Positions 2,990-12,131 of a DNA stretch of 64,000 nucleotides are shown piece after piece (the stretch's first letter is position 1; every line of letters starts with the position of its first letter). The stretch is from contig NW_019218039.1 of NCBI RefSeq assembly GCF_002571385.2, positions 278,225 to 342,224 of the forward strand, given 5' to 3'. The DNA is from Stylophora pistillata. Taxonomy: Eukaryota. The notes beneath the pieces were generated by a model that searched no databases, was not told where the DNA came from, and was given only the letters and a program-made list of their open reading frames with translations. The position numbers were made by a program, and so were the translations under genes.

Positions 2990-4215
2990 ACGCAACGTCA
3001 TTTTCCATTCACATCTTTTGTGTTTGGGATCCAGCTCCAATACAAGATCACGGATCTGGATGTTGTCTCGAACGCAAAACCACTTGTTTCTTGGTAACAA
3101 GTTTGGGATGAAATACTTCATTCAACTTCTCCAGAAATCAGTGATTCTTTTTTGTGTGCTTCGGAGTAATTGTCGCGAATTGGTTCTTTCCTCTGGTTCT
3201 GGCTGTGGCGGTGGATTGTGATGGCCTAGAAGAAGGTCGTTTGGAGTGATCGGTGGAACTTCTCAGATATCGTCGCAACTGCATTATAGCGGTTGTCTGT
3301 TGACCAGGTAGGTAACTTCTGACAAGAATGTTCTCCATTGTTCTTCGGAATAGGCTTGGTTCTTTCAAGTGGCATTAAGTGCTTGTCTGACCGACTTAAT
3401 CAGGGTCTCAACAAGTCCGTTTTGGTGACTTACATGTGGTGTGTTCTACTCCCATCTGAACTCACAGCCAAACGTAATAAAGAGGACACTACTGCCAAAA
3501 TCTTTTTCTGGCCTCGTGTATTAAATTCTTGTAGCCACGATGCCCACGTCGTTCATGGAGAACATGCAGAAGCAACTTCAAACGGGTGGTCTTGTGGTTA
3601 AGATAATAGGCTTTCTGAACTTTTCAGGGAGGGATCTGACATCTTCAAGTCAACCATGTGCACAGAGAAGGCCATCTTCACCCTTCTTTGCCACCAGTTT
3701 CTTATCCAAACTCCCTTCGTCGACGTGAAATTGACCCAACTTCAGAAGACATGCCTCGGCAGCCCTCAGTTCCTGAACTGAAATGGGTCCTGACCTCAGG
3801 TTAATTTTCCAAGCATTGCGAATAAAACGACAGACATAGGCAAGAGTTCTCTGTATCTATGAGTACGTAGAACATGTTTTCAGCAAATGTGAATGGATAG
3901 GATTTTCTTCAAATTCAGGCTGATCTAGTTCAGGGCATACTTCTGCAAAGGCACTGATGTTCACTGGCTTTCTTCTCTTTCTAAAACGTTTTCTTCTCTT
4001 TTAATCCTTCGGGGTTGTCCACATGAGCGTTAACTTGGGTGTGGTCTTGAAAGCTGGGCCACTTTTCCTCTGGCAACTCTAGGAATGATGGTCCTTCTGA
4101 CCACTTCATGAGATGATTAAGATGGATTCCTCTCGTTAGAGCATCTGGAGGGTTATGGTTAGTCTTGATGTAGCGAATTTGGTCTGCCCCAATTGACTCT
4201 TGAAAAGTGTTATAA
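2990..4215 (-). mobile_element. BEL/Pao LTR retrotransposon fragment (end of RNase H, integrase, DUF5641-like C-terminus), degenerate
   Basis: NPPDALTRG...KWSEGPSFL and FWRS.MKYFIPNLLPRNKW...DLVLELDP motifs, with stops and frameshifts. Confidence 0.75.
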
Positions 4216-5068
4216 TGCTGTAATTGTTTGTTAAGTTCAGGTTTGATCTTATTTATATATAAAAAGCTTCTTTGAATTTTTAATGAATTGAGTTAGCAGA
4301 ATCCAGAATACTAAAACAAGAAGGGGAGTATTTGTTCTTACAAGAAGNNNNNNNNNNNNNNNNNNNNNNNNNNNNNNNNNNNNNNNNNNNNNNNNNNNNN
4401 NNNNNNNNNNNNNNNNNNNNNNNNNNNNNNNNNNNNNNNNNNNNNNNNNNNNNNNNNNNNNNNNNNNNNNNNNNNNNNNNNNNNNNNNNNNNNNNNNNNN
4501 NNNNNNNNNNNNNNNNNNNNNNNNNNNNNNNNNNNNNNNNNNNNNNNNNNNNNNNNNNNNNNNNNNNNNNNNNNNNNNNNNNNNNNNNNNNNNNNNNNNN
4601 NNNNNNNNNNNNNNNNNNNNNNNNNNNNNNNNNNNNNNNNNNNNNNNNNNNNNNNNNNNNNNNNNNNNNNNNNNNNNNNNNNNNNNNNNNNNNNNNNNNN
4701 NNNNNNNNNNNNNNNNNNNNNNNNNNNNNNNNNNNNNNNNNNNNNNNNNNNNNNNNNNNNNNNNNNNNNNNNNNNNNNNNNNNNNNNNNNNNNNNNNNNN
4801 NNNNNNNNNNNNNNNNNNNNNNNNNNNNNNNNNNNNNNNNNNNNNNNNNNNNNNNNNNNNNNNNNNNNNNNNNNNNNNNNNNNNNNNNNNNNNNNNNNNN
4901 NNNNNNNNNNNNNNNNNNNNNNNNNNNNNNNNNNNNNNNNNNNNNNNNNNNNNNNNNNNNNNNNNNNNNNNNNNNNNNNNNNNNNNNNNNNNNNNNNNNN
5001 NNNNNNNNNNNNNNNNNNNNNNNNNNNNNNNNNNNNNNNNNNNNNNNNNNNNNNNNNNNNAATAAAAA

Positions 5069-5086
5069 ATATATATATATATATAT
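5069..5086. repeat. (TA)n microsatellite, left flank of the retrozyme array
   Basis: ATATAT run directly abutting the first 245-bp unit. Confidence 0.9.
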
Positions 5087-5278
5087 AGCTCTTTGGCATA
5101 CAAAGCTTTGCTTTCATGTCCAAATTGAGCACTCTATCTAGGATGAGTCATTGCCGTTGCAATTGCGCATGCTCGCTGGTTTACTCTAGTTTGAGCACTC
5201 TGGCATGGCTTAGACGATACCACAAAGGTTGGGTCGTTTGGGGTGACCGTCTCGGTTCTCCCCCATCCTAGCATTAGC

Positions 5279-5324
5279 ACTGCACTGATGAGGCCCAGAA
5301 GGCCGAAACAGTACTGTCTGCAGT
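5279..5324 (+). ncRNA. Type I hammerhead ribozyme, copy 1 (repeats every 245 bp; copies 1-6 intact)
   Basis: Stem I ACTGCA (5279-5284)/TGCAGT (5319-5324); core CTGATGA 5285-5291; stem II GGCC-CAGAA-GGCC; GAAA 5305-5308; palindromic stem III ACAGTACTGT; cleavage triplet GTC, with the cut predicted after 5318. Confidence 0.93.
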
Positions 5325-6748
5325 TAGATATAGCTCTTTGGCATACAAAGCTTTGCTTTCATGTCCAAATTGAGCACTCTATCTAGGATGAGTCATTGCC
5401 GTTGCAATTGCGCATGCTCGCTGGTTTACTCTAGTTTGAGCACTCTGGCATGGCTTAGACGATACCACAAAGGTTGGGTCGTTTGGGGTGACCGTCTCGG
5501 TTCTCCCCCATCCTAGCATTAGCACTGCACTGATGAGGCCCAGAAGGCCGAAACAGTACTGTCTGCAGTTAGATATAGCTCTTTGGCATACAAAGCTTTG
5601 CTTTCATGTCCAAATTGAGCACTCTATCTAGGATGAGTCATTGCCGTTGCAATTGCGCATGCTCGCTGGTTTACTCTAGTTTGAGCACTCTGGCATGGCT
5701 TAGACGATACCACAAAGGTTGGGTCGTTTGGGGTGACCGTCTCGGTTCTCCCCCATCCTAGCATTAGCACTGCACTGATGAGGCCCAGAAGGCCGAAACA
5801 GTACTGTCTGCAGTTAGATATAGCTCTTTGGCATACAAAGCTTTGCTTTCATGTCCAAATTGAGCACTCTATCTAGGATGAGTCATTGCCGTTGCAATTG
5901 CGCATGCTCGCTGGTTTACTCTAGTTTGAGCACTCTGGCATGGCTTAGACGATACCACAAAGGTTGGGTCGTTTGGGGTGACCGTCTCGGTTCTCCCCCA
6001 TCCTAGCATTAGCACTGCACTGATGAGGCCCAGAAGGCCGAAACAGTACTGTCTGCAGTTAGATATAGCTCTTTGGCATACAAAGCTTTGCTTTCATGTC
6101 CAAATTGAGCACTCTATCTAGGATGAGTCATTGCCGTTGCAATTGCGCATGCTCGCTGGTTTACTCTAGTTTGAGCACTCTGGCATGGCTTAGACGATAC
6201 CACAAAGGTTGGGTCGTTTGGGGTGACCGTCTCGGTTCTCCCCCATCCTAGCATTAGCACTGCACTGATGAGGCCCAGAAGGCCGAAACAGTACTGTCTG
6301 CAGTTAGATATAGCTCTTTGGCATACAAAGCTTTGCTTTCATGTCCAAATCGAGCACTCTATCTAGGATGAGTCATTGCCGTTGCAATTGCGCATGCTCG
6401 CTGGTTTACTCTAGTTTGAGCACTCTGGCATGGCTTAGACGATACCACAAAGGTTGGGTCGTTTGGGGTGACCGTCTCGGTTCTCCCCCATCCTAGCATT
6501 AGCACTGCACTGATGAGGCCCAGAAGGCCGAAACAGTACTGTCTGCAGTTAGATATAGCTCTTTGGCATACAAAGCTTTGCTTTCATGTCCAAATTGAGC
6601 ACTCTATCTAGGATGAGTCATTGCCGTTGCAATTGCGCATGCTCGCTGGTTTACTCTAGTTTGAGCACTCTGGCATGGCTTAGACGATACCACAAAGGTT
6701 GGGTCGTTTGGGGTGACCGTCTCGGTTCTCCCCCATCCTAGCATTAGC

Positions 6749-6794
6749 ACTGCACTGATAAGGCCCAGAAGGCCGAAACAGTACTGTCTGCAGT
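6749..6794 (+). ncRNA. Hammerhead copy 7 with core mutation G8A (CTGATAA), probably inactive
   Basis: Position 6760 is A instead of G while C3 is retained, breaking the C3-G8 tertiary pair. Confidence 0.75.
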
Positions 6795-6797
6795 TAG

Positions 6798-6834
<37 letters not shown>

Positions 6835-6895
6835 TTAGATATATATAATGTGCATGGAATATAATATGCACATTATATATATAATGTGCATTGAA
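6798..6895. repeat. (TA)n microsatellite and short palindromes (TGCACATTA-(TA)n-TAATGTGCA)
   Basis: Read directly; a paralogous tract lies at 13881-13968. Confidence 0.85.
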
Positions 6896-6899
6896 GATT

Positions 6900-9800
6900 A
6901 TAATAAGTATTAATTATATGAAGAAAATTAAATATAACCCTATATAAAACTATTTACAAATAAGTACATAGAATAAAATATAATAAAAAGCTAATCTAAA
7001 AAAGTGAGACTTTAAGGAGCTCTTGAATTTTGACAGGTGTCTCTCGTTACAAAGCTCCTTAGGGAGGCTGTTCTAGAGTCTTGGTGCTGCAGGAGAAAAT
7101 GCACGATCACCTAATGTTTTCAAAGTTCTTTTCGGTTGTGACAACAGAAGTCCTCTATTTGATCTAAGGTTATAACCACTATTCTCTTTAATAGTAATTA
7201 ACTCTCTCAAATATGTAGGGGCAAGTCGATGGAGTGCCTCAAAAGTCATTAGAACTACTTTAAATTCGATTCTGAATTTTACAGGAAGCCAGTGTAGAGA
7301 TCTTAGAACTGGTGTCATATGGTCAAACCTTGGTATATTGAAAATCAATCTTGCTGCTGAATTCTGAAGGCGCTGTAACTTGTTAACATACTTTAGGGGC
7401 AGTCCACATAGAATGCTGTCACAGTAATCAATACGCCCAATTATTAGTGCGTGAATTAATGATTGTGTTGCCTCATGACTTAAGTATTTCCTAATACGCC
7501 TTACATTAATTAAATGGTAATATGCAGCCTTACATGTGTGATTTATATGAGCATGCATGCTCATGTTGTCATCAAACCAAGATCCTAAATTTTTCACAGA
7601 GGAAACTGAAGATACACAGGTATCACCTATCTTATTAGAGCTAAAATGGACCTTTGACAACTGCTGCCGTGTCCCTATAACCATAAATTCTGACTTCCTA
7701 TCATTGATCTTAAGCTTGTCCCTTAACATCCACGCTTGTATGTCAAGTATGGGGATAGGAGGATAGGATAGGATAGATAGTTTATTCACCTTAAAAAACT
7801 TGCACCCAAGAGCTGAATTGCGATAAGGTTTACAAATGCAAAATTTGCAACTTACTAAAATAATTAATTACAACTAATTAGTTAATTTACTAATTAAAAA
7901 ATGTTACAGAATGACAAATTCACAAGCATGCGTCGAATTCCTATGTAAAATAAGAAACAAAATAATATCTAATTATCATCTACAATAAACGTAACTTAAA
8001 AGAAAACTATTGTTGCACCTTTCAGTTTTACATCTCGGACAAAATATAGAATATATGTTCTTTGTTCTCTCAGATAGTAGCCAGGTTGGTATTTGCTTGG
8101 AAGTAGTTTATGAAGACTGTGAGATTGATTTATCACATATTTCATTGAACAACTTTGCCACGATTGCCTCTCTTCTATTATACAGCGTTAAAAGTCCATC
8201 TGCCTGGTGCAGATTCTGGCTTAAATGCCAAATGTAGTTGCGTATCATCAGCTTATGTATGGACACTAGGAAGGTACTTACCAACCGCTTCAAACAATTT
8301 GCTCGCATAAATTGTGAACAATAGCGGTCCCAAGCATGACTCTTGGGGAACGCCTTCTTGAGGATCAAAAGCATCTGCGCAGTATGCATTGAGTGAAATC
8401 CACTGAATGTGCCCATAGAGGTATGAAGAAAACCACCTCAATGCAGTCCCTCTTATTCCAAAGCTAGATTTGAGGCGGAACAATAGCACAGATAGAGATA
8501 GATCGATAGATGGCTTTATTCAAAAACTTCGCAACCAAAGGGCTGAGCTATGTTATTGTTACAATACTAAGTAAAGATATATATAAAAAATGACCCAAAA
8601 AATTACAAAATGTATTTGTGTGAAAATTAATCTATACCTGTATATATATGTAAGTGTATAAAAGACAAGTTAAATAATCAGATATTTTACATAATTACAT
8701 GTTCATAATTAAGATAATTTTAATTATAAAACGGTGCTAGCCTTCCTCGCATTGTTATTAATAAAACCTAGTTGTGTTCTTTTAGTTAAAAACTTGGCGA
8801 TAGAGAGTGGTCTACGGTGTCAAATACTGCGCTAAGATCGAGTAACACTCATAATACAACATGGTGACTATTCATAGACACCAGAATGTCATTTTGTATC
8901 TTTAGAAACGCTGTCTCTGTGCTATAGCCCTTTCTGTAAGCAGACTGCAATACGGGGTAGAGATCGTGATAGGACAAATGAGCATGCATCTGATAAAACA
9001 CTGCAAGTTCTACAAGTTTTGAGATATACTGAAGATTGCAAACTGGTCGAAAATTGTTGAAGTCATTCACCCCCGCTTTCCTACATCTTGGATCAACAAG
9101 TGCCTCCTTCCAGACATCGGGAAAATGACCTGCTGGTAAGAATGAATTTATCATTGTGGTTATCACGAGTAGCAAATTCTCAAGGGATTCGAGAACCAAT
9201 TTTGTCGGCAAGGGGTCAAGACCACAATGTTTCTTTGATGATCGTTTTATGAGATCTTGTATGTCATTTCCAGAAAGAGGCTTGAACGATGAGAGTGCAC
9301 GTGCATCATCCACAACGGGATCCTCTGAGATTACCTCTACGTTTGTCCCAGCCATGGTATCTATGTAGTCGCGGATTCTTACTATCTTGTTCCCAAAAGA
9401 CCTCCCAATATCATTGACCAATAACGATTTATCTTCATAGTCAGGAAATCATAGCGAGTCATTCTTTCCCAGAAGCCTTTTAGAGGCGTGAAATTGCCTC
9501 TCTTGGTCACTAATATTCTCCTCTACAAAACTTGTGAAGAATTTTCGTTTCGCCTCACTCAGAAGATAAATTGCATGATTGCTTCTCTTATTGAATATCT
9601 GAAGGTCAGCATCGCTCCTGGTTTTTCTCCATTTCCTTTCGGCTTTTTTGTGCAAGATCTTGGCATTGTGTATATCCTCTCTGTACCGCGGCACCGTATG
9701 CCTGGACATAACAGTCTTCGTTTTTACCGGGGCATCTAAATCGAGGATCTTAGAGTCTTGTTATGATTCAAAGCTAGGTTATCACACTCCAGAGGACCAG

Positions 9801-11200
9801 GAGTATTCATGCTTGGCCTTGCAACAGCATCTTTACACAAAGGTGACTCAGCTAAGTCATGCGGAAACGAAACCGCATCAATTGATTTGATCCTGTGATA
9901 CTTCACTTTGACTGTGATAGAAGGCTTCCGTGACTGCAAATTACACAAGATTGCAGCATGGTCTGACAAATAACGATCAACAAATGGGGGTCCTCGAATA
10001 ACCTCTTCTGCTAGACGGGTGATTATGGGATCTAAAGTATGGCCCTGAACGTGCGTAGGACCTTTTCACATGTTACTGTGAACCGAGAGAGTCCAAAAGA
10101 TCTAGAAAATTCCGTGCATCTGCATCGCATGGATCATCCACATGAATATACATGTCACCAACTCTTAAGAGTTGCTCCTGCAATAGAAGAATGGACTCCA
10201 TATATTGGGCGAACTCCGCACAAAAAGTCGTAATTGTGACAGGATGATCTTCTGAATAAGGGGACCGATAAACAATCACAATCCGAAACTTTTTTGTAGA
10301 ACATCCGCTGACCAGCCATTCTGAATATTCAAAAGATTCATGGTCGCCTCCATCATTGAGCAAATCTCTAAACATCATTCCAGTTCTACCTCCACGTCGA
10401 CCAATCCTGTTGTGATCAAGAAACTTATACCATTTGGACAAAGCTCAGCCCGCACAGCAGCATCTTCTTCGTTCAGCCAACTCTCAGTAAATGTCAGTAA
10501 ATCAGCCTTACAATCACAGACTTAATCGAATGTATCAGAAGTCTTGTTCCGCACCGAGCAAGTACTTAAACAACCCAGTAACAAAGTCTGTCGTCGATTT
10601 CCAGGGACGGCAGTAGAACAGCTGATCTTGATTAAATTCCTAATGTTGCATGACAATCCTTTTGCTTGTTGTTTTCCTTTTTTTCCACCCCACTTGACGA
10701 CCGTGTTGATAATTCTTCAGGTTCTGGATACAATTTAAACACAAGATCTCCAATCAACAATGCCATCTAATACTCCGTTGATGAAGGAATCTGTCTTTAT
10801 CAAATTTAACAATAGACACTGCCAAAGCCGCATCACTCAAATCAGCGCTATTGTTCTTGTTAACAATGCCATACGCATCCAACCAAAAGTACATTCGAGA
10901 TCCCTTCGATAAATTCGCTTCTCCTGCTGCATAGAGAAAACCTTTTTCGGTTCAGGATTGGCCTCCAACTTCTTGATAGCTTTAAAAGGCCTCCTGTGCA
11001 TCTTGGTTCCAGTAAAAACCATCCAAAATAACCGAAACCTTGGAGCAGCCAAAACTGCTTCCAATCCTCATTACCATTTTTTCATGTTTTATGTTTTAAT
11101 TGTACTTACAATTCTGTATTCCTTTCACGAAGTAAACCTTGTATTCATGTTACGATTCTTGCTCTGTACTTAGAGACTATTGACGAGATAGCGTCCCCTC
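6900..11200 (-). mobile_element. Near full-length degenerate CR1/L2-clade LINE (APE + RT), copy A
   Basis: APE motifs (LLTFTESWL, IVIVYRSPY, GDMYIHVD, SDHAAI) at 9740-10640. RT motifs (NFRPVCNL, QSAYRKGYSTETA, GVPQESCLGPLLF, YADD, LHWLPVKFRI) at 7070-9420. Two short foreign LINE-tail insertions at about 7750-8190 and 8490-8800. Confidence 0.85.
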
Positions 11201-11239
11201 TGTAGTTTCGAAGTGGGCGTTCTCTTTTATTAGAGATAT

Positions 11240-12131
11240 GCCCCTAGGGATGTTACATAACTAGACAGGGACTAAAAATAATTTCCTGCAAAACACTCCC
11301 TCTCCACTGCGGAAATTGTATCACATTACTTTGTGATTAGATTGAGCAACAATACGCATTTATAGCAACATTTGTAGTTGCTTATGTTTCATTACTTAGT
11401 TCTTCCTTCATAGCAATTAAGCAATGTTTATGGATTGGTCGATCATAAACTGAAGTTGCAGTTTTGATTCTAACTTTTCTCACAAGACCATCTGCTGCCG
11501 CATATGTAAGAAGGACCAGTCGAAGCTTCTATGTTCTTCTCGGAGTCGGTTCCAGTTCTAACACCAAATCTCTCTCATGGAGGTTTTCTCTCGGTCTGTA
11601 CCATTTGTTTCTGGGCAACCAAATTAGGTTCAAAATATTTTACCCAACACTTGCAGAACTCTTGAACCCGCATTTCTGTGCTTCTCGTGAGGTGCCGCAG
11701 ATTCACTGTTCTGGAGCAGGGGCAGAAAATGGTGGCCAATAAGAAGGTCGTTTGGCATAACAGGAGGGCTTTACCAGATTCCATCTCAACTGGAATGAAG
11801 AGGTCGACTGTTTATTAAATATGTCACTTGTGCAATATGTGTTCTCCACTGTTTCTCTGTGAATGACTGATTCTTGGAACAGACGTCCAACACTTGCCTC
11901 ACGGATTTAATAAAACTTTTGACTACTCCATTCCGATGGCTTGCACGAGGTACATTCCATTCGCACTTGAATGTGCATGAAAATGCATTTGACAAGACAC
12001 TCTGAATTCTGGGAATATCCCAGTCTTGCATTACTTCTCTTAAATATTGTTGTGCCCCAACAAAGTTTGTTCTGCAATCTGACCAACAGTTAATAGGTTG
12101 GCCTCTGAATGATGGAAATCTTCGAAATTCC
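11240..12131 (-). mobile_element. BEL/Pao integrase C-terminus, PPT and start of 3' LTR, copy A
   Basis: WSDCRTNFVGA...EWNVPRASHRNG...INSRPL; PPT GGAGAGGGAG followed by TGTTTTGCAGG on the minus strand near 11296. Confidence 0.75.

What the first reader, a model, noticed from the sequence alone, without database searches (positions are those of the whole stretch)
5086..6797. Seven-copy hammerhead-ribozyme (retrozyme) array, predicted to yield 245-nt self-cleaved monomers or circular RNAs
Seen: 7 x 245-bp non-coding units, nearly identical, each with a complete type I hammerhead core (ACTGCA-CTGATGA-GGCC/GGCC-GAAAC-AGTACT-GTC^TGCAGT), sitting in (TA)n. Other complementary segments suggest a compact fold: CTAGGATG at 5138 with CATCCTAG at 5264, and the hairpins GGGGTGACCG-TCT-CGGTTCTCCCC and CTTTG-GCATA-CAAAG. 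Known: tandem hammerhead-bearing units of this size are non-LTR retrozymes, reported in metazoans including corals, and they yield small circRNAs. Inference: a read-through transcript would be cut after 5318, 5563, 5808, 6053, 6298 and 6543, releasing five unit-length monomers. The near identity implies recent rolling-circle-type reverse transcription of a circular template.
Basis: partly seen in the sequence, partly recalled or inferred. Interest (0 to 1): 0.9.

Follow-up and report, generated by a model that had tools for sequence, protein, structure and literature searches.

The report
Coral hammerhead retrozyme tandem array
This is a real array of seven 245-bp non-coding repeats, each with a self-cutting hammerhead ribozyme; it belongs to the retrozyme family already described and tested in stony corals, so it is a good example of a known mobile element, not a new kind.

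Summary
Window 5080-6800 holds 7.0 head-to-tail copies of a 245-bp non-coding unit at 99% identity, between two (TA)n tracts.

- **Ribozymes:** six copies carry an intact type I hammerhead. The seventh has G8>A in the CUGAUGA box (window 6760) and is probably inactive.
- **Family:** this is the published stony-coral non-LTR retrozyme (Cervera & de la Pena 2020, PMC7229834). Their tested Acropora hammerhead differs from this one only in loop 2. Their degenerate coral primer matches all seven units exactly.
- **Genome-wide counts:** 671 intact hammerheads of this type, about 212 array ends and 445 internal junctions.
- **Insertion pattern:** arrays share one fixed 3' end (cut site + TGCAGTTAG + TTA + (TA)n) and have variable 5' truncation. 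Some carry inverted partial copies. This is a target-primed reverse-transcription signature.
- **Neighbours:** arrays lie next to elements with a GIY-YIG-like domain far more often than chance. Full-length relatives of that domain elsewhere carry reverse-transcriptase motifs, as Penelope-like elements do.
- **Template:** near identity within the array does not prove rolling-circle copying of a monomer circle. Units are just as identical between loci, and some arrays share ordered variant units.
- **Expression:** supported only by RNA-seq contigs. Circularity is untested.
- **Earlier notes:** first-stage notes on other windows of this genome had already flagged such arrays.

The parts
5070..5087 (.). 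(TA)9 tract at the 5' junction, preceded by AATAAAAAA and an N run (4348-5060)
   Evidence: Sequence read; N runs listed.
5088..5318 (+). 5'-truncated first unit (unit positions 15-245; homology may begin at 5080-5083 inside the TA tract), with intact hammerhead 5279-5324 cutting after 5318
5319..5563 (+). Full unit 1; hammerhead 5524-5569, cut after 5563
   Evidence: This unit is 100% identical to units on more than 40 other contigs.
5564..5808 (+). Full unit 2; hammerhead 5769-5814, cut after 5808
5809..6053 (+). Full unit 3; hammerhead 6014-6059, cut after 6053
6054..6298 (+). Full unit 4; hammerhead 6259-6304, cut after 6298
6299..6543 (+). Full unit 5, with private T>C at 6351 (unit position 53); hammerhead 6504-6549, cut after 6543
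6544..6788 (+). Full unit 6 (last); its hammerhead 6749-6794 has G8>A at 6760 (CUGAUAA) and is probably inactive
   Evidence: It is not matched by the 46-nt pattern at up to 3 mismatches.
6789..6800 (+). Family-wide fixed 3' terminus: unit positions 1-9 (TGCAGTTAG) followed by TTA instead of the internal ATA
   Evidence: Exactly this end occurs 190 times in the genome. In the listing, 97 of 100 non-internal continuations begin TTA. The form expected from the internal junction occurs only twice.
6799..6829 (.). 3' (TA)n tract (about 15 repeats)
   Evidence: All 24 arrays with the canonical terminus are followed by TA-rich sequence, usually (TA)n, of varying length.

Best explanation
This is a genomic copy of a non-autonomous, non-LTR retrozyme of the stony-coral family.

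RNA level. A read-through transcript of the array folds a type I hammerhead in every unit:
- helix I is ACUGCA/UGCAGU;
- the core is CUGAUGA;
- helix II is GGCC-CAGAA-GGCC;
- then GAAA, and a 3-bp helix III with a GUAC loop;
- cleavage follows GUC.
The six intact ribozymes would cut after 5318, 5563, 5808, 6053, 6298 and 6543. [quoted passage not shown] By analogy with the tested Acropora element, a host tRNA ligase closes these into circles. This step is inferred, not shown here.

DNA level. The family spreads by target-primed reverse transcription at (TA)n tracts. Synthesis begins at one fixed point 9-12 nt past the cut site, runs through one to about ten units, and stops at variable positions. 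This is inferred from the insertion architecture. The most likely enzyme source is a family encoding a GIY-YIG-like endonuclease domain; only truncated copies of it were read next to the arrays, and full-length (about 700 aa) relatives from other sources carry reverse-transcriptase motifs upstream of that domain, as Penelope-like elements do. Its copies share the same insertion signatures and sit next to the arrays. This too is inferred.
For: Array and motif:
- Tandem array of 7.0 x 245 bp at 99% identity.
- All hammerhead core positions are present in six units. Helices I and II appear in the folds.

Homology to the published family:
- The published, experimentally self-cleaving A. millepora hammerhead matches with 3 mismatches, all in loop 2.
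- The published degenerate coral-retrozyme primer matches all seven units exactly.
- The paper reports 225- and 245-nt variants.

Non-coding and dispersed:
- GC is 49% and the longest stop-free stretch is 74 codons.
- The genome holds 671 intact hammerheads, 445 internal junctions and 190-212 array ends.

Insertion signature:
- 24 of 29 arrays examined end at the same terminus.
- 25 readable 5' junctions fall at 18 different phases.
- Inverted copies lie head-to-head or tail-to-tail at L040, L001 and L048.

Candidate helper:
- GIY-YIG-like domains lie within 3 kb of 7 of 20 array loci, against 0.25-0.8 hits expected across all the flanks.
- The 3' UTR of that element has a fixed 3' end, variable 5' starts and head-to-head pairs.
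- Full-length relatives of about 700 aa carry FDIKDFYPSI and YRDD reverse-transcriptase motifs upstream of the endonuclease domain.

Expression:
- The unit is present at high word depth in poly(A) RNA-seq contigs of several studies, including a 397-nt contig that extends 215 nt upstream past the first base after a cut site.
Against: - Rfam gives only sub-threshold hammerhead hits (22.9 bits, gathering score 52).
- No covariation support for the overall fold could be obtained, because the copies are too alike.
- RNA evidence comes from contigs only. It gives no strand, no ends and no proof of circles, and DNA carry-over is not formally excluded.
- Transcription of this particular locus cannot be told apart from its identical copies elsewhere.
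- The helper identity rests on association and on motifs read by eye. Pfam finds no RT domain and only a weak GIY-YIG hit. The structure model was too poor to use.
- Sequence similarity between the retrozyme and the element's 3' UTR is limited to a 12-20-nt motif of marginal significance.
Confidence: 0.88

Rival explanations
1. Arrays are made only by rolling-circle reverse transcription of a monomeric 245-nt circular RNA.
For: - Most arrays are internally homogeneous.
- A single AU-rich stretch in the unit (positions 7-15) could pair with a nicked (TA)n target and fix the start point.
- Circles are abundant in A. millepora.
Against: - The 3' terminus differs from the circular junction in a constant way: TTAG+TTA in 190 or more cases against 2 for TTAG+ATATATA.
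- Four loci share the unit order A-B-A-3' with different 5' ends; their readable flanks differ, apart from related inverted element 3' ends downstream of two of them.
- L033 reads C-C-A-A-A-A and L043 reads B'-B'-A x8. L018 alternates a variant every second unit.
- These patterns need dimeric circles, in-register template switching, or linear multimeric templates that carry the tail.
- Identity within arrays is no higher than identity between loci.
Confidence: 0.3
2. It is an ordinary satellite or minisatellite amplified at the DNA level (slippage, unequal crossing-over, segmental duplication), and the hammerhead is a passive relic.
For: - The window contains a 7-kb tandem segmental duplication next to the array, so DNA-level duplication does act here.
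- Some variant patterns (L036) fit gene conversion or unequal exchange.
Against: - About 200 dispersed arrays have unrelated flanks, one common 3' end and variable 5' truncation.
- The hammerhead core is unchanged even in copies only 80-85% identical overall.
- The family homologue is catalytically active and highly expressed.
Confidence: 0.03
3. The array is not an independent element. It is the tandem terminal repeat (pLTR) of a Penelope-like element whose body is hidden in the adjacent N run.
For: - Penelope-like elements form partial tandems with hammerheads in their terminal repeats.
- A Penelope-like fragment occupies the paralogous site at 12450-13885.
- At L039 and L046 an element 3' UTR is fused directly to a retrozyme array.
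Against: - Most arrays examined have no coding sequence within 3 kb (13 of 20 loci).
- The unit has no open frame.
- Unit and element 3' UTR share only a short motif.
- The element's own hammerhead-like motif has a different sequence.
Confidence: 0.05
4. The family is mobilised by a LINE-type reverse transcriptase, not by the Penelope-like element.
For: - Fixed 3' ends, simple-repeat tails and 5' truncation are also typical of LINE-driven SINEs (general knowledge).
- The literature leaves LINEs open as a helper.
Against: - Inverted head-to-head copies and a (TA)n target bias are described for Penelope-like elements.
- The same features are seen for the neighbouring element here.
- The physical association is at least 10-fold above chance.
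- No LINE was looked for, so this rival is not excluded.
Confidence: 0.08

Closest known systems
Acropora millepora non-LTR retrozyme, 225/245-nt variants (Cervera & de la Pena, NAR 2020, PMC7229834)
   Same: - Tandem units of about 245 bp.
- Hammerhead identical in core, helix I, helix II stem and helix III.
- The same first 23 nt after the cut site.
- The same conserved central block, hit exactly by the published degenerate primer.
- A hairpin at the same place whose sequence differs but whose pairing is kept (read by eye).
   Different: - Loop 2 is CAGAA here and AGAAA there.
- The variable arms differ.
- Nothing was measured for this species.
- The held text of that paper does not describe the fixed terminus, the 5' truncation or the (TA)n tail.
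Newt and axolotl satellite-2-type retrozymes (HHR_Amex1)
   Same: Type I hammerhead in tandem repeats of 330-350 bp, expressed as linear and circular RNA. The loop of helix III is palindromic.
   Different: The amphibian motif has a 1-bp helix III and needs to act as a dimer. The coral motif has a 3-bp helix III, and its Acropora homologue cleaves fast from a construct that carries a single ribozyme.
Hammerheads in the terminal repeats of Penelope-like elements
   Same: Type I topology. They sit in tandem or inverted insertions with 5' truncation, and some clades have a (TA)n bias. The neighbouring element here has a motif with the same layout.
   Different: Those elements encode an RT and a GIY-YIG endonuclease, while the retrozyme unit encodes nothing. 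Their hammerheads are usually minimal variants.
Plant LTR retrozymes
   Same: Non-autonomous elements with hammerhead processing and a circular RNA intermediate.
   Different: They have type III hammerheads, LTRs, a primer-binding site, a polypurine tract, 4-bp target duplications, 600-800-nt circles and Gypsy helpers. None of these is present here.

Membership tests
Hammerhead ribozyme, type I | Conserved core: CUGANGA, GAAA, and cleavage after a UH triplet | tested here: met
   CUGAUGA, GAAA and GUC are present in six units. The seventh has CUGAUAA.
Hammerhead ribozyme, type I | Three helices around the core, with helix I open and helices II and III capped by loops | tested here: met
   Helix I (6 bp) and helix II (4 bp) are predicted in the folds. 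Helix III (A-U, C-G, A-U with a GUAC loop) was read from the sequence.
Hammerhead ribozyme, type I | Score at or above the Rfam gathering threshold | tested here: not met
   There was no hit at the gathering threshold. The best was Hammerhead_HH9 at 22.9 bits against 52, E 0.01 per unit.
Hammerhead ribozyme, type I | Site-specific self-cleavage | not testable with these tools
   The A. millepora homologue, which differs only in loop 2, cleaves at about 0.8 per min.
Metazoan non-LTR retrozyme | Head-to-tail repeats of 150-450 bp, each with a type I hammerhead | tested here: met
Metazoan non-LTR retrozyme | Non-coding, GC below 50%, no LTR, primer-binding site or polypurine tract | tested here: met
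   GC is 49% and the longest stop-free stretch is 74 codons. No terminal repeats other than the units themselves.
Metazoan non-LTR retrozyme | Many dispersed copies (mobility) | tested here: met
   671 hammerheads and 190-212 array ends on many contigs. Flanks are unrelated.
Metazoan non-LTR retrozyme | Expressed as unit-length linear and circular RNA | tested here: inconclusive
   The unit is held by poly(A) RNA-seq contigs of several studies. Contigs cannot show ends, strand or circles.
Metazoan non-LTR retrozyme | Sequence homology to the published stony-coral family | tested here: met
   against sequences printed.
Penelope-like element (array as part of one) | ORF for RT plus GIY-YIG endonuclease belonging to the repeated unit | tested here: not met
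   No open frame in the array. 13 of 20 array loci have no endonuclease-like sequence within 3 kb.
Plant LTR retrozyme | Type III hammerheads in LTRs, a primer-binding site, a polypurine tract, and 4-bp target duplications | tested here: not met
   The topology is type I and there are no LTRs.
Plain satellite DNA | Amplification in place, without insertion signatures | tested here: not met
   Common 3' terminus, variable 5' truncation and inverted copies at dispersed loci.

The most novel reading that the evidence does not exclude
The insertion architecture of this family may give direct genomic evidence on how animal retrozymes move.
- Reverse transcription would start at one fixed point just past the ribozyme cut site, at (TA)n tracts.
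- The enzyme would come from a Pfam-invisible family whose full-length relatives (about 700 aa) combine RT motifs with a GIY-YIG-like domain (Penelope-like, perhaps the Hydra clade). Its copies are fused to, or lie tail-to-tail with, the arrays.
- The templates could be multimeric, whether dimeric circles or linear tailed transcripts, and not only the monomeric circle that the literature assumes.
Probability: 0.4. Interest if true: 0.6.

Novelty: already known. Interest (0 to 1): 0.33.

Why it matters
Retrozymes are among the most abundant sources of small circular RNA in animals, yet how they are copied back into DNA is still a hypothesis. This array adds nothing new as a kind.

The family in this genome is young: hundreds of identical units. 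That keeps insertion junctions readable. They show a fixed start, (TA)n association, 5' truncation, inverted copies and close linkage to one retroelement family. These are testable clues to the helper enzyme and to the nature of the template.

There is also a practical point. These arrays coincide with assembly gaps, so their copy numbers in short-read coral assemblies are unreliable.

Tried and rejected
- **Rfam:** no hammerhead at gathering thresholds. There were only sub-threshold HH9 hits, and none at all for the hammerhead-like motifs of the neighbouring element.
- **Covariation:** tested on ten family variants for the whole-unit fold and indistinguishable from shuffles. The fold rests on energy alone (z -2.1 circular, -3.2 linear).
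- **Retrozyme versus element 3' UTR:** local alignment found only a short shared motif. It was reached by 5, 16 and 14 of 300 shuffles, so homology is not established.
- **The endonuclease-like ORF:**
  - Pfam gave nothing, or GIY-YIG at E 0.038 below cut-off.
  - The PDB sequence search was uninformative.
  - The AlphaFold model had pLDDT 40 and was not used for fold search.
- **Reads:** only Logan contigs were available, so cleavage ends, strand and circles could not be examined. The 3' flank was skipped as repetitive, so it cannot serve as a silent control.
- **Genome letters:** Empty paralogous sites and more junctions could not be fetched.
- **Published 224-nt construct:** Only its 46-nt hammerhead and one primer were used as patterns.
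- **Assembly artefact:** considered and rejected as an explanation for the array as such. It stays open for the copy number.

Full report
**Observation.** Reading window 4800-7100 and running Tandem Repeats Finder shows a 245-bp unit repeated 7.0 times from about 5083 to 6802, with 99% matches and no indels. Aligned in the register of the predicted cut site, there are six full units (starting at 5319, 5564, 5809, 6054, 6299 and 6544). They are preceded by a 5'-truncated unit that is certain from 5088. Only two positions differ among the copies: T>C at 6351 and G>A at 6760. (TA)9 lies at 5070-5087 and a TA tract of about 15 repeats at 6799-6829. An N run (4348-5060) ends 20 bp upstream. Many sister arrays also abut N runs, so 'seven' is an assembly estimate.

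**The ribozyme.** Each unit reads ACUGCA - CUGAUGA - GGCC CAGAA GGCC - GAAA - C A GUAC U G - UC^ - UGCAGU.
- This gives the full type I layout: a 6-bp open helix I, the CUGAUGA box, a 4-bp helix II with a 5-nt loop, GAAA, a 3-bp helix III (A-U, C-G, A-U) with a GUAC loop, and cleavage after C17 of GUC.
- Cleavage falls after 5318 and every 245 nt thereafter.
- RNAfold recovers helices I and II.
- The last copy has CUGAUAA (G8>A at 6760). From general knowledge of hammerhead catalysis, G8 is an essential core residue, so this copy is probably inactive.
- Rfam does not call the motif: there is nothing at gathering thresholds and only Hammerhead_HH9 at 22.9 bits against 52. The identification therefore rests on the motif itself and on homology.

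**Family identity.** Cervera and de la Pena (NAR 2020, PMC7229834) describe tandem 220-245-bp repeats with canonical type I hammerheads in Acropora millepora, with 225- and 245-nt variants.
- A cloned copy self-cleaves at about 0.8 per min.
- Unit-size linear and circular RNAs appear on northern blots.
- Related sequences occur in 12 stony corals.
- Their supplement prints the cloned construct and the degenerate 'Coral_Rtz' primers.
- The 46-nt hammerhead of that construct matches six of the seven units here with three mismatches, all in loop 2, with 0 matches in 100 shuffles.
- The reverse complement of primer 108R matches all seven units without mismatch.
- By eye, the first 23 nt after the cut site are identical. 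The GGGG...CCCC hairpin here corresponds to a hairpin of different sequence but the same shape in the Acropora clone.
- RNA runs that hold the unit are labelled coral metagenome.
- This is therefore a member of a published, experimentally characterised family.
- The palindromic loop of helix III noted by another first-stage note is real. However, the paper reports efficient cleavage from a construct with a single ribozyme and contrasts this with amphibian motifs that need dimers.

**Distribution.** The 398-Mb assembly holds units 100% identical to unit 1 on more than 40 contigs.
- It has 671 intact hammerheads of this type.
- It has 445 internal junctions.
- It has 190 ends reading ...ACTGTC TGCAGTTAG TTATATA, or 212 ends of any non-internal kind.
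- That is roughly 200 arrays averaging about three ribozymes each. Reversed-pattern controls gave zero.
- A 244-bp variant forms arrays of its own.

**Insertion architecture.** I oriented 29 arrays from 24 loci.
- Twenty-four end identically, nine bases past the cut site, followed by TTA and TA-rich sequence, usually (TA)n, of variable length. One further array has a near-canonical end.
- The internal (circular) junction continues ATATAGC instead, so the terminus differs from it by one base (A10>T, or equivalently a GTTA duplication).
- Genome-wide the observed form outnumbers the expected TTAG+ATATATA by 190 to 2. In the listing, 97 of 100 ends start TTA, and two carry three GTTA repeats.
- The 5' ends are variable: 25 junctions not next to N runs fall at 18 different phases. 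Eight lie in the unit's own TA-rich stretch (phases 4-11) and four at phase 77.
- About ten 5' flanks are TA-rich, so a (TA)n tract in the target is likely.
- Inverted partial copies occur. At L040 two copies lie tail-to-tail across one (TA)27 tract, and one of them is joined head-to-head to a 9.4-unit array. Similar joints occur at L001 and L048.
- Fixed 3' end, 5' truncation, inverted copies and a microsatellite target are the signatures described for Penelope-like elements.

**Template.** That argument fails, because units are just as identical between loci. The variant patterns say more.
- Four loci (L031, L038, L042, L047) share the order A - B - A - 3' end, where B is the 244-nt variant.
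- Their 5' truncation points differ. Their readable flanks differ too, apart from related inverted 3' ends of the neighbouring element downstream of L038 and L042.
- L018 alternates a marker every second unit.
- L033 reads C-C-A-A-A-A, and L043 reads B'-B' followed by eight A.
- A monomeric circle cannot give these patterns.
- Dimeric circles, in-register template switching, or linear multi-unit transcripts carrying the tail all can.
- The constant one-base difference at the terminus also fits inheritance from tailed linear masters. A site-specific start on a circle with a systematic quirk is not excluded.
- I leave this open, at roughly equal odds.

**Candidate helper.** A first-stage note on this window pointed to 13831-13881.
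- The window contains a 7-kb tandem duplication: 6813-12132 matches 13881-19201 at 95%, and 4043-4347 matches 12142-12449.
- At the same (TA)n site, copy 1 carries the retrozyme array. Copy 2 carries a 5'-truncated element (12450-13885).
- That element has an ORF ending in a CxxC-linker plus a GIY-YIG-like domain (12955-13443). An inverted piece lies upstream (12531-12737), and the 3' UTR ends in (AT)n.
- The UTR has 39 genomic matches with fixed 3' ends, variable 5' starts and head-to-head pairs.
- The domain has at least 906 candidate copies in the genome.
- HMMER against 1.8 billion representatives finds 7,529 relatives. Full-length proteins of about 700 aa carry FDIKDFYPSI and YRDD motifs upstream. 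Read by eye, that is a reverse transcriptase followed by the endonuclease, the Penelope-like architecture.
- Pfam sees neither domain convincingly, and the structure model was unusable.
- Such domains lie within 3 kb of 7 of 20 array loci, against 0.25-0.8 hits expected across all the flanks.
- They lie tail-to-tail across the (TA)n at L038, L042, L043 and L049, or are fused head-to-tail to the array at L039 and L046.
- An RNA-seq contig also joins such a UTR end to the retrozyme.
- Sequence similarity between unit and UTR is only a short ATTGAGCACT-type motif of marginal significance.
- The literature proposes Penelope-like elements as helpers from co-occurrence, and from homology in Xenopus. 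The physical linkage seen here agrees with and extends that proposal, but it is association, not proof.

**Expression and fold.** Eighteen runs from eight studies hold at least half of the unit's sampled words, six of them on record as poly(A) RNA-seq.
- Laid contigs cover the unit at word depths of hundreds to thousands. One is a 397-nt contig that extends 215 nt upstream past the first base after a cut site.
- Contigs cannot show ends, strand or circularity. This locus cannot be told apart from its identical copies.
- The unit folds into a branched structure that leaves the hammerhead free. The energy is -83.7 kcal/mol linear (z -3.2) and -76.8 circular (z -2.1).
- Covariation could not be tested meaningfully.

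**Verdict.** The element is already known as a kind and as a family. Earlier first-stage notes had flagged sister arrays on other windows of this genome.

What may be worth a specialist's attention is the unusually clean insertion record of this young family. It bears on the unsolved question of how animal retrozymes are reverse-transcribed and by which enzyme.

Noticed in passing
window 12450-13885: 5'-truncated Penelope-like retroelement. It has an inverted RT-like piece (12531-12737, minus strand), a C-terminal CxxC plus GIY-YIG-like ORF (12955-13443, plus strand), and a 3' UTR ending ...CATTATAG + (AT)n. It sits at the site paralogous to the retrozyme array.
   Followed up: partly
window 4043-19201: A roughly 7-kb tandem segmental duplication: 6813-12132 matches 13881-19201 at 95.3%, and 4043-4347 matches 12142-12449 at 98.7%. 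The two copies carry different elements at the same (TA)n tract.
   Followed up: partly
proteins P0046, P0103: [quoted passage not shown] They have no significant Pfam match. This is a very large family (7,529 representatives at E<=0.001) that profile libraries miss.
   Followed up: partly
L039 2101-2150 and window 33470-33542 (minus strand): A tRNA-like piece almost identical to the window's tRNA gene (47.6 bits) lies directly upstream of a truncated Penelope-like endonuclease ORF. Other first-stage notes mention tRNA-headed elements in this genome.
   Followed up: no
L039 2638-2682: The 3' UTR of a Penelope-like copy has a hammerhead-shaped motif (CUGAUGA, GUGG-GCGA-CCAC, GAAA, 3-bp helix III, GUA^) with the same layout as the retrozyme ribozyme. 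Rfam gives no hit at E<=1.
   Followed up: partly
window 6820-6902 and 13887-13950: AT-rich palindromic repeats (ATGCACAT...ATGTGCAT) just downstream of the (TA)n tract give sub-threshold microRNA-family hits (mir-2001 36 bits against 74). These are most likely low-complexity hairpins.
   Followed up: no
G000 C15, C32, C53, C71, C84, C110, C111: Arrays with a 244-bp period, that is the B variant of the unit, form their own arrays. Mixed A/B arrays also exist.
   Followed up: partly
L042 and L049 (minus-strand array), 3' flanks: Two loci share 99.5% identical sequence downstream of the (TA)n (an inverted Penelope-like 3' end) and the same (TA)n length. Their retrozyme arrays differ, at 2.2 and 1.0 units. 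This is either a composite that was duplicated or repeated hits on one target.
   Followed up: partly
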